A stretch of 15,684 nt of DNA from Octopus sinensis (Eukaryota), in the NCBI RefSeq assembly GCF_006345805.1, contig NW_021835807.1:1-15684 (forward strand), read 5' to 3'. Positions 119 to 15,684 of the stretch are shown piece by piece (positions within the stretch are counted from its first letter, which is position 1; each line of letters starts with the position of its first letter). Below the pieces are notes generated by a model. The model made no database searches and was not told where the DNA came from. It saw nothing but the letters and a program-made list of their open reading frames with translations. The position numbers and the translations under genes were made by a program.

Positions 119-3100
119 CTAAGTCCAGTTTGCCGTGGCTGGCCACTGATCTAAGAGAGAGTTTGTAGCTGCTGCCCTTAGGTTACCTTCGTACCTTGCA
201 GTGGGTTCATCGGGATCCCGGAAAGCAGCTTGTCTAGATGTTTTTGAAAATGTCACATCCCGCATCATGTAGATCTCTTAGTTTTCTTGGCAGTTGTTGA
301 ACACTGAGGGCCCCTGAACGCCAGGCTATGACAGTATCTGCTCCTTACCCTGGATGTGGAAGACGGGACCTTTGGCACCACACAGTGACGTCCTGTACGG
401 GGATTGGAACATCTCTCAATTCCAAAATTGGTGCTAGTCCCTCCAGGATTTTCCATATGTATATCACTGCATATCTCTCTCGTTCTTCGTTCCAAGGAGT
501 ACAAATTGAGTTCCCTAAGCCTCTCCCAATATTCTTTTCTTTCATGGTGGAAATCCTCTTGGTGAAATGTCTTTGGATTGTCTCAAGCTCTGTGGTTAGT
601 TTGACACACTATGCGGTGACCACAGTTGGGAGCAATAGTCCAGGCGGCTTAGGACAAATGTCCTCCATAGTGTCAACATGGTCTCGCGCTCGCAGTCTCT
701 TGTCCGGAATGTCCTCAGGATCCAGCCAGTGAGTCGTCTGCACATTGTCGCCACCTTCGCGATGTGTGAAGAAAAAGATGCATCGTCACTCATGTCTATC
801 CCCAGGTCCCGTATTGATTTCGATACTGGGATTTCGATCCCTCCTGGACCAGTATAGTTGTGTTGTAATTTATATGTGTTTACAGCTTGATATTGTAAGG
901 CTTGAAATTTACCAGCATTAAATTGCATGTTGTGTGTCTTCAGCCCATTTGTATATGGCATCCAGATCTTGTTTGTAAAAGGTCAGCATCAGCTGGGTTT
1001 TTGATTGCCTGTGCTACCTTGTGTCATCAGCATAGCTAGTGAGGGATGTTGTTTGTGCTACCAAGGGCATGTCAGAGAGCGCCACCAAAAACAGCAAGGG
1101 TCCCAAGACTGTGCCCTGTGGCACCCCGCTTGCTATTGGTGTCTTCCCGAGAGGGCTCCATTGGCTGCAACCATCTGGCTTCTGTCCTTCAGGAAGTCAT
1201 GTATCCACTCACCTACTTTTCCTGTTATGCCGAGTCTGAGTAATTTGTGACATATCACTCCGTGGTCGACTTGTCAAAGGCCTTCGCAAAGTCGAGATAT
1301 ACCACATCCACCTGTGAGCGATCCAGTAGTTGTTTCAGTACCCAGTCGTAGTGTTGTAACAGCTGCGTAAGGCAGCTTCTTCCTGGGCGAAAGCCATGCT
1401 GTGTGTCAGTGAGACGGTTTTCTTCGAGGAACGTGATCAGTTTTTTTCTGATGATTCGTTCCATGACCTTACTTATGTGTGACGTCAGGGAGACTGGCCT
1501 GTAGTTTTTGGCCTCTGCTCTACTCCCTCCTTTGTGGGTAGGGCATATGGTGCCTTCTTTTAGCGCCCTGGGCAGTTTACCGTTAGCCAAGGAACCACTG
1601 AAGAGCTTCTTCAGTGGTCCCGCTAGGGCATGCCTGCATGTTTTTAGGAGGACTGCTGGGAATCCATCTGGTCCAGCAGCTGAGTTTATTCTCATTTCTC
1701 TATGGCAGATATTACATCCTCTCTGTTATGTCTATGTGGTCGATGGTTGTTGTTTGGTTGGAGTGTTGTGCATCAAAGAAAACTTCTGGGTTTGTGATTT
1801 GCATGTGCCCCAGAGGGGATGTGAACACACTTTTATACTGTTCCTTTAGTATTTCACTTATCCCTTGGGGGTCCTCAGTTAGAGAGCCCTTTTTATCAAA
1901 GAGTGGGCCAATCTTGCAGTGTACCGAGGTGGTTTCTTTCGCAAATTTAAAGAAGCTTTAGGGTTTGTTTTAATATTCTCTATGGCCCTGGCTTCTCTCT
2001 CTGCCCTCTCCTTCTCATAGGAAAGTTTGAGTGCAGTTTCCGTTTCAAAAAGTTTCAGGTGGAGTCCCTCATTGTTTCTCTGCCGTGCATTCAGTTGCTT
2101 CGAGAGCTTAGCTCTTCGCCTCATAAGTATTTTCCTGTCTCTGGGAATAACGTTCCTATGCCCGCTGGCTTTTTTTCTCCAGGACAAACTTATGGCATAT
2201 GTTCTGTATTGTTGTCATGAAATGTTGGAATGTGTGTTGGGTGTCTTGTGTGGTGATGAAATCACTCCAGTCATGTTTTCGGATCTCTTCGTTGATCTTC
2301 TTCCAGTTTGCCTTATGGAAGTTTAGACTGGATAGGCCTGTGGTATTTTCTAATGGCTGCGTCTCAACTAACTCTCTCATACCATATATCATTACCTCTA
2401 CTAAGTTGTGATCTGAGAGAATTGTTGGTGTTACCATTATGTTGTGGATGAGCATCGGGTTGCTTGTGAAACAGAGGTCCAAGACATTCTCACCTTTTGT
2501 TGGCCGAAGCACTGCTTGTTCCATGAAAACTTGCGTGTGAGAGCCAACAAGGACTCTCTGTCTCTCTGTTCAAGTGATGTCATTCCAGGGAGGAGATGGC
2601 CATCTGGCCATTTGACTTTCGGAAGGTTAAAATCTCCCAGCAGTAGAATGGTGTTACCCTGGTCCAGTTTGTCCAGGACTTCTTCTATTCTTCTGAGGCT
2701 ATCTTCAAACACTCCTTCATGACTAGGGGTGTCTGATGGCCGATATGTGACACATATTACTATTTTCGGTTGTTTCATGTGTACTATCAGTGTGTCACAG
2801 ACTGAGTTTGAGTGTGTCAACAGTACTATGGGTGTGACATCTTCACGGACGTACAGGGCAACCCCACCATGAGTTCTTTCCTTCCTGTCTGACCGAAAAA
2901 CAGTATACTTTGGTATGTGTATTTCTGCATCTGCTATACTGCTTGACAGGTGCGTTTCAGTCAGCGCTATGCATATTGCATGGTTGCTTGTGCTTAAGTC
3001 CCTAAGGTAAGGAATTTTACTCATATTAGTGGGTTTCACCAGACCTCTGACATTCAGCAGAAGCACTGGTGAGATATTTGGGGTGTCAATAAAGGCTGTC

Positions 3101-3135
3101 GGTGTGGCACCTGGGCTGGTGTCAGCGGTGGCCAC
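119..3135 (-). pseudogene. LINE A ORF2 (APE endonuclease + reverse transcriptase), split by many 1-bp indels
   Basis: APE motifs LLLNVRGL, IALTETHL, GGVALYV, VTYRP, LLGDFNLP (2437-3135) and NVLDLCF, SDHNLV (2156-2524). RT motifs GPDG, NYRPVSLTS, QHGFRPGRSC, VYLDFAKAFDK (1255-1695), PQG at ~1114-1121, YADD at 1023-1034. Thumb and C-terminal segments lie in ORFs 596-961, 345-545 and 265-504; stop TAG at 119-121. Confidence 0.92.
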
Positions 3136-4040
3136 CCTGGGTCCCTTGATTGTGGTGGTCTTGAGTGCTGTTGTGAGTGCCCCTGGCTCTGAAGACGATG
3201 TATCCAGGCCAGTTGTCCCACAATTTTCTCTGCTATTTCCACAAAATTTCTTTGTACTGCTGCCGCCGTCTGCATTTCCTCTGCAAATGTGCGCCTTCTC
3301 CTTGTTGGGGCATTCCGCACTATGTCTGCATATTTCTGGGGCAGCTTGTATTTGTTCTGGTTTTGGTTTCGGTCTTGGTTTTGGTTTCGGTCTTGGTTTT
3401 GGTTTCGGTCTTGGTTTTGGTTAAGGCATTTTGGTCGAGTGGGTTTGATGCAATTTCCATAGGGCCTGGGATGAGCGAACCTGCATCCTTCCCCGTTTCT
3501 CCATGCCAGCAGGTTCCATTCCGGAAGAATTTGCATGTTATCTGGGTTTTTTGTCCCCAGTTCCTCTCTGTTTTTTCTCCTCCGTTGGACGGTTGTCCAC
3601 TGGTTCCTTCTGCATAGGTATTTTCATCCGGGTGGTTATTTTCCGTTTTCCCCATCGCCGCCTACCTGTTGTTTGCCCTGCTTGCCTTCTTCGACTGTGG
3701 CAGTGGGCGTGTCATTTTTTGACACTCTGTGGTTGGTGTTTCCTGTTTCCATCTCTCTCTCTTTGTCTTTGTCCACCTTGAGGACTTGGCTTAGCAAAGC
3801 CATGTGTGGTGCAATGAGAGTGTAGACCCTTTCGACTTCTCTTTTCTTCCTCTCTACTTGCGCCAACGTCCTCATAAAGCCATGGCTTTTCAGGGTCGCC
3901 GCTATGTTTTTAGTTGGTTGCGATCTGTCGGCCAAGCTCCATCCTCTGATGAAAACTTCCAGCTCTACTTTCGTCCAGTTACGCTGGCTTTTGTTGACGC
4001 CAGTGTTTGCATTCACCTCTAATTTTTGCATGTTGTCCAT
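3054..4040 (-). pseudogene. LINE A ORF1: Myb/SANT(trihelix)-like domain (3822-3977), charged linker, CCCH zinc finger (3471-3535), YADIV/helical C-terminus; two indels
   Basis: ATG at 4040 (MDNMQK). WTKVELEVFIRGW...IAATLKSHGFMRTLAQVERKK resembles the trihelix pattern. The finger reads CKFFRNGTCWHGETGEGCRFAH after restoring one G in a G-run. Homologous to LINE B ORF1. Confidence 0.8.
3359..3422. repeat. 18-bp tandem repeat (GGTTTTGGTTTCGGTCTT) x ~3.5 inside ORF1, encoding NQNQDR
   Basis: Direct inspection; in frame in ORF 3054-3536. Confidence 0.9.
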
Positions 4041-4044
4041 TCCG

Positions 4045-4500
4045 TTGTAGCGGGGAGAGAGAGAGAAGCTGTGAGGGAAAAAGGGAGAAGGGAGGAGAGA
4101 GGAAGAGATTGTGAGGAAGGGAGGGTGAGAGAGAGGAAAAGAAGACTGTTTTGGGGAAAGAGAGAGAGGGTGAGAGAGAGGCAGGGAAGGAAAGCGAGAG
4201 AGGGCGAGAGAGATAGAGAAAAGGGGTCTGAAGGAAAGAAAAAGAGAGAGATTGGGAGGGAGGGAGTGAGTTCGTGAGGGAAAGAGAAAGGGATAGTGAA
4301 AAGGAAGGAGAAAGGGAGAGTGAGGAGAGAGAGGGGAGAGATAGTGTGATGGAAAGAGCGAGAGAGGGGAGAGAAAGAGGTAGTGCAGGAAAGCGAGAGA
4401 AAGGATTACGAGGGAGAGATAGAGGGGCAGAGAGGCTGTGAAGAAAGAGAGAGAAGAAAGAGATTTTGAGAGAGGAGAGAGTGTGAGAATGCAAGAGAAG
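4045..4500. repeat. Degenerate GA-rich polypurine tract (polypyrimidine leader on the LINE sense strand)
   Basis: About 450 bp almost entirely G/A on the plus strand, ending a few bases from the ORF1 ATG. Confidence 0.9.
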
Positions 4501-4648
4501 GAATAGCTACAATATGTTACATATACACACATACTTACTATATAGATATAGATAAAGTAAAAATATCCATTCATCACAGATATGTACAACCTGCAAACAT
4601 CGACACTTGTCACGGGAATTTACCGTTCTAAATAACACACGCGCACGA

Positions 4649-4824
4649 TATATATATTATGTATATATATATATATGTATATGTAATATATATATATATA
4701 TATGTATATGTATATATATATATGTATATGTTATATATATATATATGTATATATATATATGATTGATTGATTGATTCTAGTTTCAGCCTATGAGCTGTGG
4801 CCATGCTGGGGCAACCGCCATATG

Positions 4825-4883
<59 letters not shown>

Positions 4884-5225
4884 GTATATGTATATAATAT
4901 ATATATGTATTGTTATATATATATATGTATATGTATATATATATATATGGTATATGTTATATTATATATGTATATATATATATATATTATATGTATATAG
5001 TATTATATATACATATGTATATGTATATATATATAATATATGTATATGTATATATATAGGTATATGTAATAATGTATATATGTATATGTATATATATATA
5101 TGTATATGTATATAGTATAGTATATATATATAGTATATGTATATATATATATGTAATGTTATATATATATATGTATATGTATATATATATATGTATATGT
5201 ATATATATATATGTATATGTATAGT

Positions 5226-5258
<33 letters not shown>

Positions 5259-5395
5259 AATATATATATTATAAATATATATATATATAAATATATATAA
5301 TATAATATATATATATATAAATATATATATATATAATATAATATATATATATAATATATATATATATAAATATATATATATATAAATATATATAA

Positions 5396-5431
<36 letters not shown>

Positions 5432-5445
5432 AAATATATATATTA

Positions 5446-5501
<56 letters not shown>

Positions 5502-5527
5502 ATATATATATAAATAGATATAAATAT

Positions 5528-5562
<35 letters not shown>

Positions 5563-5644
5563 ATAATATATATATATATATATAAATATTATTATATATA
5601 TAATATATATATATATATAAATAATATATATATATTAAATATAT

Positions 5645-5702
<58 letters not shown>

Positions 5703-5780
5703 TGTATATATATATATATTGTATATATATATATATGTATATATAATATATATATGTATATTATATATATATATATATAT

Positions 5781-5831
<51 letters not shown>

Positions 5832-6000
5832 TATGTATATTATATATATATATGTATATATATATATGTATATATATATAGGTGTATATATATATGTTAT
5901 ATATATATATATTATATATTAATATATATATGTGTATATATATATATGTATATATATATATGTGTATATTATATATGTATATATAAATATATATATATAT
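4649..6000. repeat. Compound (TA)n/(TATATG)n microsatellite, interrupted at 4761-4819
   Basis: Direct inspection. Confidence 0.95.
4761..4819 (-). mobile_element. Severely 5'-truncated LINE stub: 3'-UTR signal plus (ATCA)n tail, related to LINE A
   Basis: 4780-4819 matches LINE A 64-102 at 32 of 40 aligned columns; the tail is (GATT)4 on the plus strand. Confidence 0.8.
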
Positions 6001-6291
6001 ATAATTTCAACAATTGAGGGTAAAATTAATTAATTATTAATCAATTTCACCAAGTGTTCAGTATGCAAAGGGACCATTTAAGGCGAATTCAAATTATTAC
6101 ATTATATAAAAGGGCTTAGTAAAATAAATTACTTCGCCGCATACTGAACTCATTAGAAATAGCAGCTAAAAAACTTTTTTAAAGCTATTTCTAATACTTA
6201 AAGAAAATCTCTCTCATATATAGCGTTTGCCTAATTCAACTCACAAAAGTTTGGGGGTAAGGACATTAAAAAATCAAATGCTAAGGTTATT

Positions 6292-6343
6292 TGAGTACGT
6301 ACGTTTCAAGATTAGTCAAAACAACACTTCTATCTTCAGCTCA
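6292..6343 (-). ncRNA. Minimal type I hammerhead ribozyme motif, array copy 1
   Basis: Minus strand: UGAG-CUGAAGA-(25 nt)-GAAAC-GUAC-GUA^CUCA. Stem I is 4 bp; stem III has a palindromic loop; stem II is weak, with U.U at its base. Confidence 0.72.
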
Positions 6344-6829
6344 GAAATTCCTTGGTTTGGATTTGGAAACACTGAAACTAAGAACATACCCTTTCGAAGA
6401 TTCGCTCGTTACTAACAGTGCCAACTAACCCAAAATAAGCAAGTGAAGAATTTCTGTTCTCCCCTTTCCACCAGCGTGGGTTAAAATCATCAAACGCTAT
6501 GCTTATTTCGGTAAAATCCGAAGCATTAATTAGAGGGAGATTAATTATAATTTCAACAATTGAGGGTAAAATTAATTAATTAATCAATTTCACCAAGTGT
6601 TCAGTATGCAAAGGGACCATTTAAGGCGAATTCAAATTATTACATTATATAAAAGGCTTAGTAAAATAAATTACTTCGCCGCATACTGAACTCATTAGAA
6701 AAGCAGCTAAAAAACTTTTTTAAAGCTATTTCTAATACTTAAGAAAATCTCTCTCATATATAGCGTTTGCCTAATTCAACTCACAAAAGTTTGGGGTAAG
6801 ACATTAAAAAATCAAATGCTAAGGTTATT

Positions 6830-6881
6830 TGAGTACGTACGTTTCAAGATTAGTCAAAACAACACTTCTATCTTCAGCTCA
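6830..6881 (-). ncRNA. Minimal type I hammerhead ribozyme motif, array copy 2
   Basis: Same sequence as copy 1, 538 nt away. Confidence 0.72.
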
Positions 6882-7373
6882 GAAATTCCTTGGTTTGGAT
6901 TTGGAAACACTGAAAGTAAGAACATACCCTTTCGAAGATCCGCTCGTAACTAACAGTGCCAACAAACCCAAATAAGCAAGTGAAGAATTTCTGTTCTCCC
7001 CTTTCCACCAGCGTGGGTTAAAATCATCAAACGCTATGCTTATTTCGGTAAAATCCGAAGCATTAATTAGAGGGAGATTAATTATAATTTCAACAATTGA
7101 GGGTAAAATTAATTAATTATTAATCAATTTCACCAAGTGTTCAGTATGCAAAGGGACCATTTAAGGCGAATTCAAATTATTACATTATATAAAAGGGCTT
7201 AGTAAAATAAATTACTTCGCCGCATACTGAACTCATTAGAAATAGCAGCTAAAAAACTTTTTTAAAGCTATTTCTAATACTTAAAGAAAATCTCTCTCAT
7301 ATATAGCGTTTGCCTAATTCAACTCACAAAAGTTTGGGGGTAAGGACATTAAAAATCAAATGCTAAGGTTATT

Positions 7374-7425
7374 TGAGTACGTACGTTTCAAGATTAGTCA
7401 AAACAACACTTCTATCTTCAGCTCA
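7374..7425 (-). ncRNA. Minimal type I hammerhead ribozyme motif, array copy 3
   Basis: Same sequence as copy 1, 544 nt from copy 2; the array ends 9 nt beyond its stem I. Confidence 0.72.
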
Positions 7426-7434
7426 GAATATTCC

Positions 7435-7442
7435 TTATATAT

Positions 7443-7484
<42 letters not shown>

Positions 7485-7542
7485 TATATTATAATATATA
7501 TATGTGTGATATATATATATGTATATATAAATATATATATAT

Positions 7543-7582
<40 letters not shown>

Positions 7583-7628
7583 TATATATATATGTATATG
7601 TATATATATGTATATATTTATATATATG

Positions 7629-7662
<34 letters not shown>

Positions 7663-7700
7663 TGTATATATATGTGTATATAGATATATATTGTATATAT

Positions 7701-7734
<34 letters not shown>

Positions 7735-7837
7735 TTATATATATATATGTATATATTTATATATATGTATATATATATTATGTAATATATATATATATAT
7801 ATGTATATATATGTGTAATATATATATGTATTATAAA

Positions 7838-7868
<31 letters not shown>

Positions 7869-7877
7869 GTATATATA
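7435..7877. repeat. (TA)n microsatellite
   Basis: Direct inspection. Confidence 0.95.
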
Positions 7878-8075
7878 ACTACAAAATTAGAGAATGGAGA
7901 AACATACTTAAATCAATAAAACATCAACTATCCGATGATACTCAATCCATACTTTAATACACCATTACATAGGAGTAAAGGCAATATATAAAATGAAATG
8001 AGATATACAGTAATAGTAAAAGTAAAAAGATAAAGAGATATAAGTAAAAAATTACAAATATAATATGCAAATAAA

Positions 8076-8195
8076 TCAAAACTGACAGCTGTTTCGGCAG
8101 TGAGGACAGTCATACCTCATTTAACCTATAAGCCATAAAGGCAGGTATAAATGAGGCATTAACAAAGATGCCCCACGGCCTCTTCAGAGAATTAA
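8076..8195 (-). ncRNA. Type I hammerhead ribozyme motif with 85-nt stem II (left arm)
   Basis: Reverse complement of the right-arm motif: CUGAAGA at 8187-8181, GAAAC-AGCU-GUC at 8095-8084. Confidence 0.7.
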
Positions 8196-8531
8196 ATTAA
8201 ATTTGTTATAATAGTGAAAATTATTATATAATCATATACATATAAATATAAAAATATAAAAATGTAAAATATAAAAACTTATACATCATAATGCTACACT
8301 TGTATAATATAATACACATTTGTACAAAAAGGAAGGTAACCAGAACAAAATAAAACAAAATATATAACAGTGTATATATAATATTAATAAGTACCGATAT
8401 CATACATATTTAGCTAATAGTTATTTTTATAAAAAAAAGGGCTAACACATATGGAGATGAAAAATAATAATAATTAAATCCGTGGTACAGTTCATAAAAT
8501 TCTAAAGCTATAAAAGTTAATAAAAATTACT

Positions 8532-8534
<3 letters not shown>

Positions 8535-8568
<34 letters not shown>

Positions 8569-8579
8569 GTAATAATAAT
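8535..8579. repeat. (AAT)n microsatellite in the left arm (mirror (ATT)11 at 12068-12100)
   Basis: Direct inspection. Confidence 0.9.
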
Positions 8580-9993
8580 AAAAAATAATAAAAATAGATA
8601 CAGTTAAGTTAGCACCAAGTCCATCCTTCCAAGATCTAAATAACTATGAGTTAAGAAATGCTGACCACTAGGTAAAGAAAATTTAGATTAATTCGATTGG
8701 CTATTGGTTTGAAATTTAAATCACAAAAGAAAATTATACGGTTGGTTAGTCAGGGAACGCCAATATTCACACACGCATCTACAGATCAATCGCACATACA
8801 CACATAGTTATATGTATATACATACACTTGTACATATACATAATCATAAGCAACAACTAACACTTAGATAAACAAATAGGGAAGCAACCATGCTAACACT
8901 AAGTCCTTCAAAATTATAACTGAGCCTCAATAACAAAAAAAGAACCATCCATGCATTCTATAAAATATTTAATTAAGATATAAATATATTTTTAAATATC
9001 AGTATGTTACTAATTCAGATAATTATTTCATGGGTAACTTAAAATTTATAACACCGGTTTGTTGCAGAGTAAACATACGGTTGTTAGGTTTATCGTAAGT
9101 TTGTTATGATTTTAAGTACGCTAAATTATAAAGTATAAAATATAAAATATATTAATTTAGATATTATAAATAAGTCACTTATTAACTTAATAAATATAGT
9201 GCCATAATATACCAGTTTAGGCAATAAAAAATAGAAGGGGAAGTATTAATGTAAACGCTTATGAGAACATCACAGAAATTTTAAATAAATTTTATATTAT
9301 AAAGACTTAAGATGAAAAGAGATAAAATAAATAAAAAGGAATAAATACGAAGGAATAAATACGGTTATACACATAATTATAAGTACAAACTAGTATATAT
9401 GTATTCATATATTATTAAAATTAAATAAAAATAAATGACAGATATGTATGTATAAAACTACACCAGTATAAGTAAATAAGTAAAAAATAAATAGGTAACA
9501 AATTAAATGACTTGATATGTATGTAAACATCCACACTTAAATAGGCAAATAAATAAATAAATAGAAGACTAGATGCAAATATTGATAATATTACAATAAA
9601 ATGGGAAATAAATAAAAATAAATAAAGTGAATATATATATTTTATATTGTTGAAAGTAAATATGTATGGAAGGATAGTTTAAAGTACAGATCCAGAGGAC
9701 TATAGATATAAACTAAATATATGAGGCTGGTAACAATTATAAAGCAAAATGCATGTAAATGAGAAAATGAAAAAAATGAAAAAGGTTTATCAGTGAATAG
9801 CATAAGATACAAATTAAGGTGAGTACAAAAAGACCAAATATATAATAAAAACCTTCCAAATCAGCACATACAAAAAACCTATAATCTCAACCTAAACCCA
9901 CCAAACTCACAAAAGGCTCTCATATATTACATATTATACAATATCATTACATTATCCAGAGCTAGGTATCTAACCAAGATATACATATATACT

Positions 9994-10368
9994 ATGCAAT
10001 ATACTGTAGTTTACCAATGCACTGTAGATACACAATTGAGTAGTAGGGTGTATATCGGGGCAACTATGAATAGCATAAAACAAAGATGGAATTATCATAG
10101 ATATACTTTTAGGAATAAAAATAGAATGTACTCTACAGGGCTAAGTGCATATATTTGGGAACTTAAAAGTAAGAACTTAGATTTTAGATTAAACTGGAAA
10201 ATACTAACTTCAGCACCTGTGTATAATGGAAAAAATAAAAAATGCTCTCTATGTATTAATGAAATTTTCTTCATTATTAAAGCGGGTCGGCAAATTATTA
10301 ACAACATTAATGAGAAAAACTTCTTTTGTATTCATAGGCTACCGTTCACCTTTTCTAGATTCAAATAG
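9994..10368 (+). CDS. Stand-alone GIY-YIG endonuclease, 124 aa, Penelope-like (Naiad-type) with C-terminal CxxC...CxH
   Basis: VVY...YIGAT, KQRWNYH, TGLSAYIWELK, LNWKIL, CSLCINE (predicted catalytic Glu), INNINE, FCIH; no frameshift or internal stop. The Naiad assignment is by motif recall, not a search. Confidence 0.82.
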   Translation: MQYTVVYQCTVDTQLSSRVYIGATMNSIKQRWNYHRYTFRNKNRMYSTGLSAYIWELKSKNLDFRLNWKILTSAPVYNGKNKKCSLCINEIFFIIKAGRQIINNINEKNFFCIHRLPFTFSRFK

Positions 10369-10658
10369 AACTTAGCACTTCCACTATTATCAATTTTTTA
10401 ATTCCCTTCTTTAACTAAATATACCTGTGGTCTTCTATAATTCTAAAGTATACAATTTATAAATTTCATAATTTTATAATTTTTATAGCTACATTTGTAT
10501 AATAATTAATGGATGTGTCTAGCATTATTGGTTTCTTGGTTTTTGTATGTGGGTTTTTGTTTGTTTTTTTAAGAGAAATGCAATATGACAGAAAATAACA
10601 TATTCATTTTGGTATTTGCCTTGTAATGTGTGATTTTTGAAGTTTTCCAATATTGCAT

Positions 10659-12060
10659 AGTATATTGCATAGTATATATGTATATCTTGGTTAGATACCT
10701 AGCTCTGGATAATGTAATGATATTGTATAATATGTAATATATGAGAGCCTTTTGTGAGTTGTGGTGGGTTTAGGTTGAGATTATAGGTTTTTTATGTGCT
10801 TTTTGGAAGGTTTTTATTATATATTGGTCTTTTTGTACTCACCTTAATTTTATCTTATGCTATTCACTGATAAACCTTTTTCATTTTTTTCATTTCTCAT
10901 TTACATGCATTTTGCTTTATAATTGTTACCAGCCTCATATATTTAGTTTATATCTATAGTCCTCTGGATCTGTACTTTAAACTATCCTTCCATAATATTA
11001 CTTTCAACAATATAAAATATATATATTCATTATTTATTTATTTATTTCCCATTTTATTGTAATTATCAATATTTGCATCTAGTCTTCTATTTATTTATTT
11101 ATTTGCCTATTTAAGTGTGGATGTTTACATACATATCAAGTCATCTAATTTGTTACCTATTATTTTTTACTTATTTACTTATACTGGTGTAGTTTTACTA
11201 CATATCTATCATTTATTTTTATTTAATTTTAATAATATATGAATACATATATACTAGTTTGTACTTATAATTATGTGTATAAACGTATTTATTCCTTCGT
11301 ATTTATTCCTTTTTATTTATTTTATCTCTTTTCATCTTAAGTCTTTATAATATAAAATTTATTTAAAATTTCTGTGATGTTCTCATAAGCGTTTACATTA
11401 ATACTTCCCCTTCTATTCTTTATTGCCTAAACTGGTATGTTATGGCACTATACTTATTAAGTTAATAAGTGACTTATTTATAATATTTAAATTAATATAT
11501 ATTTTATATTTATATTTTATAATTTAGCGTACTTAAAATCATAACAAATACGATAAACCTAACAACCGTATGTTTACTCTGCAACAAACCGGTGTTATAA
11601 ATTTTAAGTTTACCCATGAAATAATTATCTGAATTAGTAAACCATATGATATTTAAAATTATATTTATATCTAATTAAATATTTTATAGAATGCATGGAT
11701 GGTTTTTTTTTGTTATTGAGGCTCAGTTATAATTTTGAAGGACTTAATGTTAGCATAGTTGCTTCCCTTTTTGTTTATCTAAGTGTTAGTTATTGCTTAT
11801 GATTATGTATGTGTATAAGTGTATGTATATACATATAACTATGTGTGTATGTGCGATTGATCTGTAGATGCGTGTGTAAATATTGGCGTTCCTTAACTAA
11901 CCAACCGTATAATTTTCTTTTGTGATTTAAATTTCAAACCAATAGCCAATCGAATTAATCTAAATTTTCTTTACCTAGTGGTCAGCATTTCTTAACTCAT
12001 AGTTATTTCGATCTTGAAAGGATGGACTTGGTGCTAACTTAACTGTATCTATTTTTATTA

Positions 12061-12103
<43 letters not shown>

Positions 12104-12757
12104 AGTAATTTTTATTAACTTTTATAGCTTTAGAATTTTATGAACTGTACCACGGATTTAATTATTATTTTTCATCTCCATATGTGTTAGCCCCTTTTTT
12201 TTATAAAAAAAACTATTAGCTAAATATGTATGATATCGGTACTTATTAATATTATATATACACTGTTATATATTTTGTTTTATTTTGTTCTGTTTACCTT
12301 CCTTTTTGTACAAATGTGTATTATATTATATAAGTGTAGCATTATGATGTATAAGTTTTTATATTTACATTTTTATATTTTTATATTTATATGTATATGA
12401 TTATATAATTATTTTTCACTATTATAACAAATTTAATTTAATTCTCTGAAGAGGCCGTGGGGCATCTTTGTTAATGCCTCATTTATACCTGCCTTTATGG
12501 CTTATAGGTTAAATGAGGTATGACTGTCCTCACTGCCGAAACAGCTGTCAGTTTTGATTTATTTGCATATTATATTTGAAATTTTTTACTTATATCTCTT
12601 TATCTTTTTACTTTTACTATTCTTTTTACTTTTACTATTACTGTATATCTCATTTCATTTTATATATTGCCTTTACTCATATGTAATGGTGTATTAAAGT
12701 ATGGATTGAGTATCATCGGGATAGTTGATGTTTTTACTGATTTAAGTATGTTTCTCC
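10659..12757 (+). repeat. Right arm of ~2.1-kb inverted repeat
   Basis: Reverse complement of 7896-10005 with scattered small indels and substitutions. Confidence 0.95.
12438..12557 (+). ncRNA. Type I hammerhead ribozyme motif with 85-nt stem II (right arm, downstream of and sense to GIY-YIG)
   Basis: CUGAAGA 12446-12452; stem II GGC...GCC 12453-12537; GAAA 12538-12541; palindromic ACAGCUGU stem-loop III; GUC^ at 12547-12549. Stem I is weak (2 bp, UU/UU, then ~4 bp). Confidence 0.72.
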
Positions 12758-12770
12758 CTCTTATTTGTTA

Positions 12771-12772
<2 letters not shown>

Positions 12773-12816
<44 letters not shown>

Positions 12817-12849
12817 TATATATATATATATATATCTATATATGTATAT
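12773..12849. repeat. (TA)n microsatellite
   Basis: Direct inspection. Confidence 0.9.
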
Positions 12850-12966
12850 GATTGATGATTGATTGATTATATATATGGTTCCGTTTTCAGATTATAATAT
12901 ATGGGTTTGATTGATTATATATATATGGTTCCGTTTTCAGATTATATATATATGGTTCCGTTTTCA
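12850..12966. repeat. (GATT)n plus three ~25-27-bp copies of GATTATATATATGGTTCCGTTTTCA; possible retroelement 3' tail on the minus strand
   Basis: Copies at about 12865, 12913 and 12940; the tail resembles that of the 4761 stub. Confidence 0.65.
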
Positions 12967-13400
12967 GCAGAGAAAAGACGTGATTGCCTTTGCTCTGTGA
13001 AAAAGTCTGCATAGAACGGCGAATAACCCACTGTAGTTGCAAAACATAAAACTCTAAGTCATAGAGATCACACAACACTTTGGTTAAAAATATTTTTAAA
13101 AATATATATATAAATATATACATATACACAGTAATTTTCATTTTCCCTGAAACGCACATGGTGCAAAAATAACTGAATCAAGTTATCTCCTGCAAGAAAG
13201 AAAAAAGAAGCATCTCTCCCGAAAAAAATCCCGTAAATCAAAAAAATTATCCAGACCACATTGTTGGATTAAGTATCAATTTCATCTATTTCATATTTTA
13301 TTTATTATTCTATTTTATCTTTCACTTAGGCCCACATCTTAGTTAAAGTTGCGATCGTCATTTGGTTTGTTTACATTTTCAATAACTGTTCTCGATATAA

Positions 13401-14570
13401 TAATTTTCCAGATACTCTATCTTCTAATTAGCCTTAAGATTAAATTAAATAACGTTTAATATTGATACCGTCAAATTAGCCTTAGGATTAAATTAAATAA
13501 CGTTTAATATTGTTAATAATTATTGTTAATTAGCCTTAAGATTAAATTAAATAACGTTTAATATTGTTTTAATATTGTTAATAATTTTTCAGATACTCTA
13601 TCTTCTAATTAGCCTTAAGATTAAATTAAATAACGTTTAATATTAATAACGTCTAATTAGCCTTAGGATTAAATTAAATAACATTTAATATTGTTAATAA
13701 TTATTGTTAATTAGCCTTAGGATTAAATTAAATAACGTTTAATATTGTTAATAATTACTGTTAATTAGCCTTAAGATTAAATTAAATAACGTTTAATATT
13801 GTCTAATATTGTTAATAATTATTGTTAATTAGCCTTAGGATTAAATTAAATAACGTTTAATATTGTTTAATATTGTTAATAATTATTGTTAATTAGCCTT
13901 AAGATTAAATTAAATAACGTTTAATATTGTTTTAATATTGTTAATACTTCTTCAGATACTCTATCTTCTAATTAGCCTTAAGATTAAATTAAATAACGTT
14001 TAATATTACCCACACTCTAATATAATATTAACATTGCTAATATATTTTCAGATACTCTATCTCCTGATTAGTCTTAAGATTAAATAACGTTTTTATCCAC
14101 ACTCTAATATAATATTAATATTGCTAATATATTTTCAGATACTCTATCTTCTAATTAGCCTTAAGATTAAATTAAATAACGTTTAATATTAATAACGTCT
14201 AATTAGCCTTAAGATTAAATTAAATATGGTTAATATTGCTTAATATTGTATATATAATTTTTCAGATACTCTGTCTTCTAATTAGCCTTAAGATTAAATT
14301 AAATAACGTTTAATATTACCCACACTCTAATATAATATTAATATTGCTAATATATTTTCAGATACTCTATCTCCAAATTAGCCTTAAGATTAAATAACGT
14401 TTTTTACCCACACTCTAATATAATTAATATTGCTAATATATTTTCAGATACTCTATCTCCTAATTAGCCTTAAGATTAAATAACGTTTTTTACCCAAATA
14501 ACGTTTTTACACAAACTTTAATATTGTTAATATTTCTTTTTCAAGTACTCTATCTTCTAATTAGCCTTAA
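13401..14570. repeat. Modular AT-rich minisatellite, 17 copies of core AATTAGCCTTA(A/G)GATTAAATTAAATAACGTTT with shuffled linkers
   Basis: Counted by eye; recurring linkers CAGATACTCTATCTTCT, GTTAATAATTATTGTT, CCCACACTCTAATATAATATT. Confidence 0.9.
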
Positions 14571-14631: not shown

Positions 14632-15565
14632 ATGTCCAGAGCATGGAGACTTGACGAGCTGGATTTATTCGTACGAGCATGGGAGTGCGCCGGCGGAGAT
14701 AGCCCTAGCGAGATGATTGCGGCTGCGCTGAAGAGCAGAGGCTACAAGAGGACAGCGGCTCAGATGGAGCGAAAGAGACAGGAATTCGTGCGCTCATATG
14801 CGCTTGTACGGTCGCACATCGTGCGCTCATATGCGCTTGTACGGTCGCACATTGGCGCACTTGATGCATCTTTGAGAAGCGGGGCAAGATGGCAAGAATG
14901 GAGACGATGAAAGAAGTCACCCCCACCTGGTGGACGCCAGGAGGAGGTTTTGAATGAGAAACCTGCCCGGGAAGTGAACCCAGGTGCAAGTTCTCCACCG
15001 GCAGCAAGGGCCATGGAGACGGAGAACCTGGTGAAGAGGTAGAGGGAGGAAGAAGAACTAAAGAAGGACTGGAAGAGCTAAAGGAAAAGAAAAGCTCAAG
15101 CAGGACCAAAGAGTGAAACAACCAGGAATAGAAGTGGAACCGCAAAGGATGGAACCAAACAGCGCACACGGGTGTGTACGTTCTACCTGAGAGGTTCCTG
15201 CTGGCACGGAAAGGAAGTGCAGGCTGCCGCTTTGCACATCGGGGACCCTGCCACAGAGACACGAGGCAGATGGACAAACCATCAACACAAAGAAAATGGA
15301 TGGACTACGCACCACCTGCCCCAAGCGGAGGTACGCAGATGTTGTGCGCGCCACAAACAGCCAACATGATGTTGTCGAAAGAGCAGCTGCTGAGCAACAA
15401 TCTTTTTTGTGCATGGCACAAAAGATTGTACAGCAGCTGACCTGGCTTCATCAAACCCAAGCCCGCAGGTGGGACTACCAACTATATACCAGACCCACAC
15501 AGCAAACAGACACAGGATGGACACCGCCGGCAACAACGTACACCTCACCCCGATACTCCTACTGA
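14632..15565 (+). pseudogene. LINE B ORF1 (Myb/SANT-like 14644-14817; CCCH 15175-15239), frameshifted
   Basis: 27 of 58 residues identical to the LINE A Myb-like domain without gaps; CTFYLRGSCWHGKEGAGCRFAH after restoring one G; RRYADVVR...AQKIVQQLTWLH matches QKYADIVR...AEKIVGQLAWIH. Confidence 0.8.
14786..14851 (+). repeat. Perfect 33-bp tandem duplication, in frame (VRSYALVRSHI x2)
   Basis: TCGTGCGCTCATATGCGCTTGTACGGTCGCACA twice. Confidence 0.95.
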
Positions 15566-15684
15566 ACATCAGAGGACTGCAAACACTCAGTAACAGGACA
15601 AAGATCCCGTTCCTGAGAGACTTTGTTGCATGCAATCAAGCCTTATGCATAGCACTTACAGAAACGCACCTGAAACCGGACATA
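15517..15684 (+). CDS. LINE B ORF2 N-terminus (APE endonuclease), truncated by the window end; not in the ORF track
   Basis: MDTAGNNVHLTPILLLNIRGLQTLSNRTKIPFLRDFVACNQALCIALTETHLKPDI aligns with LINE A VLLLNVRGL...SKIPYLRD...ICIALTETHL. Confidence 0.88.
   Translation, partial: MDTAGNNVHLTPILLLNIRGLQTLSNRTKIPFLRDFVACNQALCIALTETHLKPDI

What the first reader, a model, noticed from the sequence alone, without database searches (positions are those of the whole stretch)
7896..12757. 4.9-kb palindrome: nuclease-only Penelope-like element with a hammerhead in each arm
Seen: ~2.1-kb very AT-rich inverted arms, a 653-bp spacer with an uninterrupted GIY-YIG ORF, a ribozyme motif about 200 bp inside each outer end, and no recognisable RT. 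Known: PLEs encode RT + GIY-YIG, carry hammerheads in pLTRs, and often have an inverted pLTR upstream of 5'-truncated copies. Inference: either a one-off truncation/inversion product, or a self-contained non-autonomous element that supplies its own nuclease and borrows an RT. A transcript of either strand would be a giant hairpin trimmed near its 3' end by one hammerhead, resembling a copy-back genome and a likely siRNA source.
Basis: partly seen in the sequence, partly recalled or inferred. Interest (0 to 1): 0.85.

Follow-up and report, generated by a model that had tools for sequence, protein, structure and literature searches.

The report
Head-to-head truncated Penelope-like retrotransposon copies
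The 4.9-kb palindrome is real, but it is the ordinary scar left when a Penelope-like retrotransposon (Hydra clade, probably in a cephalopod genome) inserts two incomplete copies head-to-head into a (TA)n microsatellite, not a new kind of nuclease-only element.

Summary
The arms are 7896-10005 and 10659-12757 (98% identical) with a 653-bp spacer. An open 124-codon frame has a confidently predicted GIY-YIG fold. A type-I hammerhead lies about 200 nt inside each outer end, and the window holds no PLE reverse transcriptase.

The nuclease belongs to the Hydra clade of Penelope-like elements (PLEs). Thousands of relatives are ~700-aa RT-EN proteins carrying that clade's published motifs, and the closest are from Octopus bimaculoides. 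The window's frame begins exactly at the GIY motif, so it lacks the zinc-finger linker and the RT.

The locus is best read as two 5'-truncated copies with their 3' ends facing outward into (TA)n. The forward copy is 10006-12757 and the inverted copy is 10005-7896. The "spacer" is the extra 653 bp of the longer copy.

Independent relatives from a bryozoan genome and from environmental contigs show the same inverted-adjacent architecture. The literature describes it as typical, and a purified PLE protein primes on both target strands.

The self-contained non-autonomous reading has no support, but I could not test junction recurrence because the host genome is not searchable here. The 2.1-kb gap between stop codon and hammerhead, and the 85-nt helix II, are unusual for the clade.

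The parts
7436..7877 (.). (TA)n microsatellite, left flank of the insertion (target sequence)
   Evidence: TRF finds period 2 with 228 copies. Hydra-clade PLEs insert into (TA)n (PMC8557442, section 11).
7878..7895 (-). Terminal stretch of the left copy that matches the right end only weakly (12 of 15). It may be the variable PLE 'tail' or a chance AT-rich match.
   Evidence: block 7878-7892 against 12772-12758. The tail concept comes from PMC8557442 and PMC11167929.
7896..10005 (-). Left arm: the inverted, 5'-truncated copy (copy B). It consists only of non-coding 3' region, and its 3' end is at 7896.
   Evidence: It has no ORF of 60 aa or more except a 61-aa frame over the hammerhead. It has no protein homology.
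8084..8187 (-). Type-I hammerhead motif of the left copy: CUGAAGA, an 85-nt helix II, then GAAAC-AGCU-GUC, with predicted cleavage after 8084
   Evidence: descriptor scan and shuffles; MFE fold forms helix II; comparison with family hammerheads
9994..10368 (+). Open frame of 124 codons. Codons 1-4 (MQYT) come from the left arm. Codons 5-124 are the complete GIY-YIG catalytic core of a Hydra-clade PLE endonuclease, running to the family's natural C-terminus.
   Evidence: The residues Y7, Y20, G22, K29, R31, H35, C84, C87, E90, N103/104, C112 and H114 are all retained.
10006..12757 (+). Forward 5'-truncated copy (copy A): EN core, a ~2.08-kb AT-rich 3' UTR, the hammerhead, and a 208-nt terminal region
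   Evidence: The truncation point is fixed by the alignment to octopus P0001 and P0115, which carry CxCX5C...R(R/K)E directly upstream of VVYQC.
10369..10658 (+). The part of the 3' UTR that only the longer copy has.
   Evidence: A 12-bp tandem duplication, ATATTGCATAGT x2.3, lies at 10650-10677 across the arm boundary.
10659..12757 (+). Right arm: the part of copy A that is shared with copy B
12446..12549 (+). Type-I hammerhead motif of the forward copy, with predicted cleavage after 12549
12782..12849 (.). (TA)n microsatellite, right flank of the insertion
   Evidence: TRF finds period 2 with 34.5 copies.

Best explanation
The locus is a single insertion site in a (TA)n microsatellite. It holds two 5'-truncated copies of one Hydra-clade Penelope-like retrotransposon, joined head-to-head with their 3' ends facing outward. 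The most likely origin is as follows. The RT-EN protein of an autonomous copy elsewhere in the genome cut both strands of the (TA)n target. Each freed 3'-OH then primed reverse transcription from the same internal start site near the 3' end of element RNA. One cDNA stopped 2110 nt in, and the other stopped 2752 nt in, just inside the nuclease coding region. The two incomplete cDNAs were then joined at 10005/10006. The palindrome, the 'spacer' and the nuclease-only frame are by-products of this event. The frame is open because the insertion is young, and nothing indicates that it is expressed or acts alone. The hammerheads are the normal pLTR ribozymes of the element, carried along passively. 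What is shown: the anatomy, the family assignment, the truncation point, the (TA)n flanks, and the recurrence of the architecture in relatives. What is inferred: priming on both strands as the cause, the absence of expression, and the one-off status.
For: (1) Family: 3457 homologues. Full-length relatives are ~700-aa RT-EN proteins on 2.4-3 kb contigs. Of 79 of them, 77 have DKT, 0 have DKG, 68 have RW[KR], 76 have the CxCX4-6C linker, 0 have two Cys between GIY and YIG, 77 have CxxC-E and 76 have CxH. This is the Hydra-clade definition in PMC8557442, section 11. (2) Truncation: the window frame aligns from the GIY motif to the natural C-terminus. The closest relatives, O. bimaculoides P0001 and P0115 (61-64% identity), continue upstream into the linker. 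No RT remnant exists in the window. (3) Both outer ends abut (TA)n, the clade's preferred target. (4) The same architecture appears in independent relatives. In L004 (Watersipora subatra) a 1384-bp inverted copy, 100% identical, abuts a full-length copy with a 943-bp spacer. In L002 a 434-bp inverted copy abuts a partial tandem. In L022 there is a 487-bp inverted pair at 94.7%. [quoted passage not shown] This predicts symmetric outer ends, which is what is seen. (6) The hammerhead matches the family type: same core and the same helix III, CAG..CUGU-H. (7) The arms differ by 28 substitutions and 30 indels, and the spacer is unique sequence, so this is not a fold-back read artefact.
Against: The parent element and the copy number in the host genome could not be examined, because the genome is not in any searchable collection. 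One-off status is therefore inferred, not shown. The ratio of indels to substitutions between the arms is about 1:1, which is high for neutral divergence. That could mean two different template RNAs, RT errors or assembly errors. If indels hit the 363-nt frame at the arms' rate, an intact frame would be expected only about 8% of the time (my estimate). This is weak and not significant, but it leans towards constraint or towards uneven indel rates. The element is atypical for the clade. Its 3' part alone is 2.75 kb, whereas whole Hydra elements are under 3 kb. Its hammerhead lies 2078 nt after the stop codon, against 63-190 nt in relatives. No target-site duplication can be read in (TA)n.
Confidence: 0.8

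Rival explanations
1. Snap-back (copy-back) synthesis during a single insertion. One cDNA was made from the 3' end up to the VVY codons. The RT then switched template onto its own nascent cDNA at the position equivalent to 10659 and copied back to the end, producing a hairpin cDNA with a 653-nt loop.
For: It gives the same final geometry. The innermost 102 bp of the arms are identical. A 12-bp tandem duplication sits exactly at the inner arm boundary, 10650-10677, which could mark template slippage.
Against: It predicts arms that are identical at time zero, with copying continuing into the target primer. The (TA)n flanks are self-complementary, so this cannot be read. In relatives the inverted copy abuts full-length or tandem forward copies (L004 and L002). 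That is more simply explained by two independent priming events, for which there is direct biochemical evidence (PMC11167929). No microhomology is visible at 10005/10006.
Confidence: 0.1
2. A propagating, non-autonomous palindromic element. It would carry its own stand-alone GIY-YIG nuclease and borrow an RT, and its transcript would be a 2.1-kb hairpin processed by the hammerhead.
For: The catalytic core is complete, with every family-invariant residue retained, and an in-frame ATG is available at 9994. The frame is intact although the arms carry 30 indels. The right arm retains the 3' region that a PLE RT would recognise.
Against: The frame is cut exactly at the start of the core. It lacks the linker zinc finger thought to guide (TA)n targeting (PMC8557442). 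There is no upstream PLE promoter, because the hammerhead-bearing terminal regions point outward (inference). The hammerhead is of the dimer-dependent type and would be buried in the hairpin. Identical geometry in relatives arises with full-length forward copies. No second copy was found in any collection searched.
Confidence: 0.05
3. A DNA rearrangement after insertion, or an assembly artefact. In the first case an ordinary single truncated PLE copy was later partly duplicated in inverted orientation by replication template switching or hairpin-capped break repair. In the second case an assembler or a chimeric long read created the fold-back.
For: Palindromes are known assembly hazards, and PMC8557442 notes that PLE structures 'often lead to problems in WGS assemblies'. 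The excess of 1-2-nt indels between the arms resembles long-read error.
Against: A fold-back artefact gives a zero or adapter-sized spacer and near-identical arms. Here there are 653 bp of unique coding and UTR sequence, 28 substitutions with a transition bias, an 18-bp duplication and an 11-bp microsatellite difference. Both outer ends coincide with the same element position and with (TA)n, which a random rearrangement would not reproduce. The architecture recurs in several independent assemblies.
Confidence: 0.05

Closest known systems
Hydra clade of Penelope-like elements (Craig, Yushenova, Rodriguez & Arkhipova 2021, PMC8557442)
   Same: The GIY-YIG endonuclease has no CCHH motif, and CxxC and CxH flank the catalytic E and N. 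Full-length relatives carry the CxCX5C linker and the DKT and RW(K/R) motifs. A hammerhead lies downstream of the ORF. Insertion is into (TA)n. The hosts are aquatic invertebrates, including molluscs.
   Different: This copy has no RT or linker because it is 5'-truncated. The non-coding 3' region is ~2.4 kb, against 63-190 nt between stop codon and hammerhead in the relatives examined here. Helix II of the hammerhead is 85 nt against 20-30 nt. The closest proteins are from octopus, and the paper does not list cephalopods by name for this clade.
The standard PLE insertion architecture: pLTR partial tandems with an inverted 5'-truncated copy adjacent (Evgen'ev & Arkhipova 2005; Arkhipova 2006; Fig. 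2 of PMC8557442)
   Same: An inverted 5'-truncated copy directly abuts the 5' side of a forward copy, which gives inverted repeats with the 3' ends and hammerheads outermost.
   Different: Here the forward copy is itself severely truncated, to the last 121 codons, and there is no tandem pLTR. The whole unit therefore looks like a clean palindrome with a small coding spacer.
Twin priming in LINE-1 insertions (Ostertag & Kazazian 2001; cited from my own knowledge, not read here)
   Same: Both strands of the target prime reverse transcription, producing an inverted 5' segment joined to a 3' segment with both parts truncated.
   Different: In L1 both segments come from one RNA, so they are non-overlapping or barely overlapping and make an inversion rather than a long palindrome. 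Here the two copies overlap over 2.1 kb, which implies two template molecules or two passes. The enzyme is a GIY-YIG PLE protein that has been shown to cut and extend both strands (PMC11167929).
Retrozymes, the non-autonomous hammerhead-bearing derivatives of PLEs (PMC4918200; bioRxiv 10.64898/2026.07.22.740005)
   Same: They are RT-less sequences derived from PLE terminal regions and carry type-I hammerheads.
   Different: Retrozymes are short direct tandem or dispersed repeats, with a sense hammerhead in each unit, and they circularise. This locus is an inverted pair with only one sense hammerhead per strand and a coding remnant. The neighbouring 540-bp tandem array at 6005-7432 is a closer match to that description than the palindrome is.
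I-TevI-type GIY-YIG homing endonuclease catalytic domain (PDB 1mk0, 1ln0)
   Same: The predicted fold and the order of catalytic residues (Y..Y.G..R..H....E....N) match.
   Different: Sequence identity is 16-18%. The PLE domain has extra Cys/His motifs and is normally fused to an RT rather than to a DNA-binding domain.

Membership tests
GIY-YIG nuclease superfamily | The three-stranded sheet and helices fold of the catalytic domain | tested here: met
   AlphaFold2 with a 111-sequence alignment gives pLDDT 91.1 and pTM 0.83, with elements in the order E-E-H-H-E-H. The top three Foldseek PDB hits are the I-TevI catalytic domain, with prob 0.99, 0.93 and 0.90 and target-normalised TM 0.61-0.69. 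The next hit has prob 0.11.
GIY-YIG nuclease superfamily | Signature residues: GIY Tyr, YIG Tyr-Gly, Arg, His, Glu and Asn | tested here: met
   Y7, Y20, G22, R31, H35, E90 and N103/104 are present and are invariant or nearly so in the family. Pfam PF01541 does not hit the window copy itself, but it hits 19 of 111 relatives with best E 1e-5. The best PDB sequence hit is T4 endonuclease II at E 0.18.
Penelope-like elements, Hydra clade | [quoted passage not shown] | tested here: met
   The window has a single Cys between VVY and YIG. C84-x-x-C87 precedes E90, and C112-x-H114 follows N103/104. Among relatives, 0 of 79 have two Cys, 77 of 79 have CxxC-E and 76 of 79 have CxH.
Penelope-like elements, Hydra clade | CxCX5C linker upstream of the EN core | tested here: inconclusive
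   It is absent from the window copy because the copy is truncated just downstream of it. It is present in the closest relatives P0001 and P0115 (CYCRVRENC, CDCRISNNC) and in 76 of 79 full-length relatives.
Penelope-like elements, Hydra clade | PLE-type RT with DKT (not DKG) and an N-terminal RWK motif, fused upstream of the EN | tested here: inconclusive
   It is not present in the window. It is present in relatives: 77 of 79 have DKT, 0 have DKG, 68 of 79 have RW[KR] and 78 of 79 have Y[RK]DD.
Penelope-like elements, Hydra clade | Hammerhead ribozyme motif in the terminal repeat region downstream of the ORF | tested here: met
   There is one motif per arm. The same type is found 63-190 nt after the EN stop codon in L002, L003, L004, L005, L029 and L108.
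Penelope-like elements, Hydra clade | Insertion into (TA)n | tested here: met
   (TA)n lies at 7436-7877 and 12782-12849, directly outside both ends.
Penelope-like elements, Hydra clade | Short element, generally under 3 kb | tested here: not met
   The 3' part from the GIY motif to the end is already 2752 bp. By extrapolation a full-length parent would be roughly 4.5-5 kb. The paper says 'generally', so this is a tendency and not a strict criterion.
Hammerhead ribozyme, type I | Conserved core C3-U4-G5-A6-N7-G8-A9, G12-A13-A14, the A15.1-U16.1 pair, and H17 at the cleavage site | tested here: met
   The sequence reads CUGAAGA ... GAAA-C-AGCU-G-UC^ at 12446-12549 (+) and 8187-8084 (-).
Hammerhead ribozyme, type I | Three helices around the core, supported by covariation | tested here: met
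   Helix II has 3+8 bp at its base and is formed in the MFE fold. Helix III is 2-3 bp. Helix I has 2 bp, a 2x2 internal loop, then 4 bp. Across 19 distinct family hammerheads, helices I and II keep pairing while their sequences change. These sequences were selected with a descriptor that required pairing, so the covariation evidence is partly circular.
Hammerhead ribozyme, type I | Match to the curated Rfam hammerhead models | tested here: not met
   There is no hit at the gathering score or at E<=10. The models also miss the hammerheads of genuine family loci L002-L005, so the test is insensitive for this variant.
Hammerhead ribozyme, type I | Self-cleavage activity | not testable with these tools
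   This needs in vitro transcription. The palindromic helix III (ACAGCUGU) predicts dimer-dependent activity, as described for PLE min-hammerheads (PMC4209133).
Non-autonomous PLE derivative / retrozyme | Multiple dispersed or tandem copies of the same RT-less unit with identical internal junctions | not testable with these tools
   The host genome is not in the collections. No close relative was found in the protein or metagenome collections.

The most novel reading that the evidence does not exclude
The head-to-head unit is not inert. When read through from a neighbouring promoter, it yields a 2.1-kb perfect hairpin RNA that feeds the siRNA or ADAR pathways against the active Hydra-clade PLE family. 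Alternatively, the palindrome with its intact stand-alone GIY-YIG core is itself mobilised in trans, and the 10005/10006 junction recurs across the genome. Either case would make double-strand-primed PLE insertions a regular source of self-targeting hairpin loci.
Probability: 0.06. Interest if true: 0.6.

Novelty: new member of a known kind. Interest (0 to 1): 0.25.

Why it matters
The main value is as a worked example. An apparently exotic "nuclease-only palindromic element" turns out to be the standard head-to-head insertion product of a Penelope-like element. Its geometry is what the recent biochemical finding predicts, namely that a PLE protein primes on both target strands.

Three smaller points go beyond what the papers I read describe:
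- Hydra-clade PLEs appear to have a young lineage in a cephalopod-like genome.
- That lineage has a much longer 3' untranslated region than relatives, and a hammerhead whose helix II carries a ~60-nt extension.
- Rfam's hammerhead models miss this whole clade's ribozymes, so annotation pipelines will under-call them.

Tried and rejected
- Rfam on the window found no hammerhead, at the gathering score or at E<=10 on 7700-13000. Only chance miRNA-like hits to AT-rich repeats appeared.
- Pfam and NCBIfam on the ORF gave nothing useful.
- The word-indexed homologue search with the ORF alone gave nothing. With a 3-sequence alignment it returned only two octopus proteins.
- The single-sequence AlphaFold model was useless, with pLDDT 32.
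- A profile search of PDB sequences with alignment A3 gave no hit.
With A2 it found no close relative in metagenomes.
- Exact look-ups of three window ORFs found none on record. The host genome, the parent element and the copy number therefore stayed out of reach.
- The O. bimaculoides locus L001 holds a degenerate copy. It shares only ~71% identity over 106 nt of EN coding sequence and has no hammerhead, so it was no use as a parent.
- Supplementary files listing the Hydra-clade hammerheads are not held.
- I considered and rejected these readings: a fold-back assembly artefact; a link between the 540-bp tandem array and the PLE through shared 3' sequence, since none was found; and any relation between the palindrome and the flanking non-LTR elements.

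Full report
**Observation**

I aligned the left region against the reverse complement of the right. The inverted arms are 7896-10005 and 10659-12757, with 2118 of 2159 aligned positions identical (98.1%). A global alignment of the arms counts 28 substitutions (18 transitions, 10 transversions) and 30 short indel events. These include an 18-bp duplication and an 11-bp microsatellite length difference, and the innermost 102 bp are identical. Arm GC is 0.20-0.28. ORF 9994-10368 (+) is open for 124 codons. The palindrome is therefore real and far beyond chance. The unique spacer and the pattern of differences between the arms argue against a fold-back read artefact.

**The nuclease**

Pfam, NCBIfam and the indexed homologue search gave nothing for the ORF. 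The best PDB sequence match was T4 endonuclease II, at only E = 0.18.

The exhaustive HMMER search found 3457 relatives with E <= 1e-3 and 785 with E <= 1e-10. Of 111 relatives tested, 19 individually hit Pfam GIY-YIG, with best E 1e-5. An AlphaFold2 model built on that alignment is confident (pLDDT 91.1, pTM 0.83). Its only credible structural matches are the I-TevI catalytic domain (prob 0.99, 0.93 and 0.90); the next hit has prob 0.11. Y7, Y20, G22, R31, H35, E90 and N103/104 are retained, as are all 17 positions that are at least 90% conserved in the family. The GIY-YIG call is correct.

**Which family**

The closest relatives are two Octopus bimaculoides proteins, 61-64% identical. UniRef names one of them a "GIY-YIG domain-containing protein".

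Longer relatives are ~700-aa proteins on contigs of 2.4-3 kb. Named hosts include a bivalve, a bryozoan and a coral. Upstream of the nuclease these proteins carry an RT-like region. Counts among 79 full-length relatives:

| Motif | Relatives with it |
|---|---|
| DKT | 77 |
| DKG | 0 |
| RW[KR] near the N-terminus | 68 |
| Y[RK]DD | 78 |
| CxCX4-6C linker | 76 |
| Two cysteines between GIY and YIG | 0 |
| CxxC before the catalytic Glu | 77 |
| CxH near the C-terminus | 76 |

This is point for point the definition of the Hydra clade of Penelope-like elements (PMC8557442, section 11). That definition also includes short elements, detectable hammerheads and insertion into (TA)n. The window's insertion is flanked on both sides by (TA)n, at 7436-7877 and 12782-12849.

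**Truncation**

In the alignment the window frame matches the family from the GIY motif to the natural C-terminus. In the octopus relatives the residues directly upstream are the linker (CYCRVRENCVFGNSCMRRE-VVYQC). In the window they are MQYT, encoded by the last 12 nt of the left arm, which is antisense 3' UTR. tblastn with twelve relatives, including full-length ones, finds nothing else in the window. The frame is therefore a 5'-truncated remnant that happens to begin at the catalytic core. The spacer is simply the 653 bp by which the forward copy (10006-12757) is longer than the inverted copy (10005 back to 7896).

**Hammerhead**

Rfam reports no hammerhead, but it also reports none in four loci that hold genuine full-length family members. 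Its silence is therefore uninformative.

I scanned with my own descriptor: the core CUGANGA...GAAA...UH, a helix II of at least 5 bp with one mismatch allowed, a short helix III, and at least 4 of 6 pairs in helix I. It finds exactly two hits in the window, one per arm: + strand 12446-12549 and - strand 8187-8084. The expectation is 0.007 hits per composition-preserving shuffle.

The same descriptor finds motifs in the family loci. In L002, L003, L005, L029 and L108 they lie 120-190 nt after the EN stop codon. L004 has a variant 63 nt after its stop codon. Nineteen distinct hammerheads of this type share the core and the helix III sequence CAG-NN-CUGU-H, while helices I and II change sequence and keep pairing. 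That covariation is partly circular, because the descriptor required pairing.

The window's version differs in three ways:
- Helix III is the perfect palindrome ACAGCUGU.
- Helix II is an 85-nt irregular hairpin instead of 20-30 nt. The MFE fold forms it.
- The motif lies 2078 nt after the stop codon.

Short palindromic helix III is the hallmark of the dimer-dependent min-hammerheads of PLEs (PMC4209133).

**Architecture in relatives**

Self-comparison of the family loci shows the same layout:
- L004 (Watersipora subatra): a 1384-bp inverted copy, 100% identical, abuts the 5' side of a full-length copy. This is a palindrome with a 943-bp spacer.
- L002: a 434-bp inverted copy abuts a partial tandem of direct copies.
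- L022: a 487-bp inverted pair at 94.7% identity.
- L005: inverted fragments further upstream.

[quoted passage not shown] The window differs only in that its forward copy is also heavily truncated.

**Mechanism**

[quoted passage not shown] Reverse transcription starts at the same internal site of the RNA on both strands, and hammerhead cleavage is not needed for insertion in vitro (PMC11167929).

Two target-primed cDNAs growing towards each other from one staggered cut give two copies with 3' ends outward, symmetric outer ends and arbitrary inner truncation points. That is the anatomy seen here. This step is inference. Snap-back synthesis on the nascent cDNA gives the same geometry and cannot be excluded, because the (TA)n flanks are self-complementary.

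The near 1:1 ratio of indels to substitutions between the arms is unusual for neutral decay. It may reflect two different template RNAs, RT errors or assembly errors.

A transcript across the locus would indeed fold into a hairpin. The inner 300 nt of the arms alone give about -459 kcal/mol. Three points weaken the rest of the claim:
- In PLEs where it has been mapped, transcription starts in the pLTR (PMC8557442). Here the equivalent terminal regions sit at the outer ends and point outward, so any transcript would be read-through. This is inference.
- The hammerhead region gains about -174 kcal/mol by pairing with its complement in the other arm rather than folding locally.
- Each strand carries only one sense hammerhead, of a dimer-dependent type.

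Trimming by the ribozyme is therefore doubtful. The open frame is adequately explained by youth. At the arms' indel rate an intact 363-nt frame would be expected about 8% of the time by my estimate, which is not significant. The coding stretch also probably contains fewer low-complexity runs than the arms, which I did not quantify.

**What could not be done**

The host genome is not in any collection I could search. No close DNA or protein relative beyond the octopus proteins was found. The O. bimaculoides locus L001 is a degenerate copy with no hammerhead. I therefore could not test whether the 10005/10006 junction is unique, or recover the RT-EN parent from the same genome.

**Verdict**

The locus is a PLE remnant of the ordinary inverted-truncated kind. 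It belongs to the Hydra clade and probably sits in a cephalopod genome. For that clade it has an unusually long 3' region and an extended hammerhead helix II. It is a new member of a known kind and of modest interest.

Noticed in passing
window 6005-7432: A tandem array of a ~540-bp unit with 2.6 copies (units start at 6005, 6551 and 7088) that are 99-100% identical. It lies in the same (TA)n tract as the PLE. TRF missed it because the period exceeds 500. Each unit carries a hammerhead-like core on the minus strand: CUGAAGA at 6339, 6877 and 7421, a 25-nt segment, then GAAAC-GUAC-GUA^, with a palindromic helix III (ACGUACGU) and a 4-bp helix I. A relaxed descriptor hits all three units, against 0.003 hits expected per shuffled window. 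However, helix II is weak (~3 bp with a U.U closing pair), Rfam gives no hit at E<=10, and the unit shares no sequence with the PLE. It could be a retrozyme-like non-autonomous repeat.
   Followed up: partly
window 596-4613 (- strand): A degenerate non-LTR retrotransposon. It has an ORF1-like region with a Myb/SANT-like segment and a CCCH-like motif (3054-4613), an AP endonuclease (2437-3135; Pfam Exo_endo_phos, E 1.7e-6) and an RT (1255-1695; RVT_1, E 1.1e-10). The coding sequence is broken into several frames. This is the only RT in the window, and it is unrelated to the PLE.
   Followed up: partly
window 14632-15684 (+ strand): A second, diverged copy of the same kind of non-LTR ORF1 (Myb/SANT-like, weak Pfam hit at E 0.003, and a CRFAH CCCH-like motif). 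It lies in the opposite orientation to the one at 3054-4613. Two related LINE 5' regions therefore face each other across the ~10-kb AT-rich block. They are roughly 50% identical at protein level by eye, and no long DNA inverted repeat was reported between them.
   Followed up: no
window 13398-14515: A satellite-like array with nested periods of about 54, 87, 128, 310 and 363 bp. Its core is TAATTAGCCTTAAGATTAAATTAAATAACGTTTAATATTG.
   Followed up: no
window 12856-12967 and 4763-4775: Just right of the PLE there is a short tandem repeat, TATATATGGTTCCGTTTTCAGATTA (27-bp and 50-bp periods), preceded by (GATT)n. A (GATT)n run also borders the large (TA)n/(TATG)n tract at 4763-4775.
   Followed up: no
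window 4640-6003: A ~1.4-kb compound microsatellite, (TA)n/(TATATGTA)n, with GC as low as 0.04. Together with 7436-7877 and 12782-12849 it suggests one long (TA)n tract that has been hit repeatedly by insertions: the tandem array and the PLE pair.
   Followed up: no
window 3979-4500: A strongly strand-biased purine/pyrimidine low-complexity stretch. GC skew is +0.79 and AT skew +0.50 in the 4001-4500 composition window, and the minus-strand ORFs overlapping ~3979-4500 read as Ser/Leu/Pro repeats. It lies at the 5' end of the non-LTR element.
   Followed up: no
L002-L005 (family loci), all hammerhead positions: Rfam 15 hammerhead models at gathering threshold miss every hammerhead of these Hydra-clade PLE loci. 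Examples are L002 5802-5847 and 8282-8327, L005 8308-8348, and L004 from ~8170. Standard annotation will therefore under-call ribozymes of this clade.
   Followed up: partly
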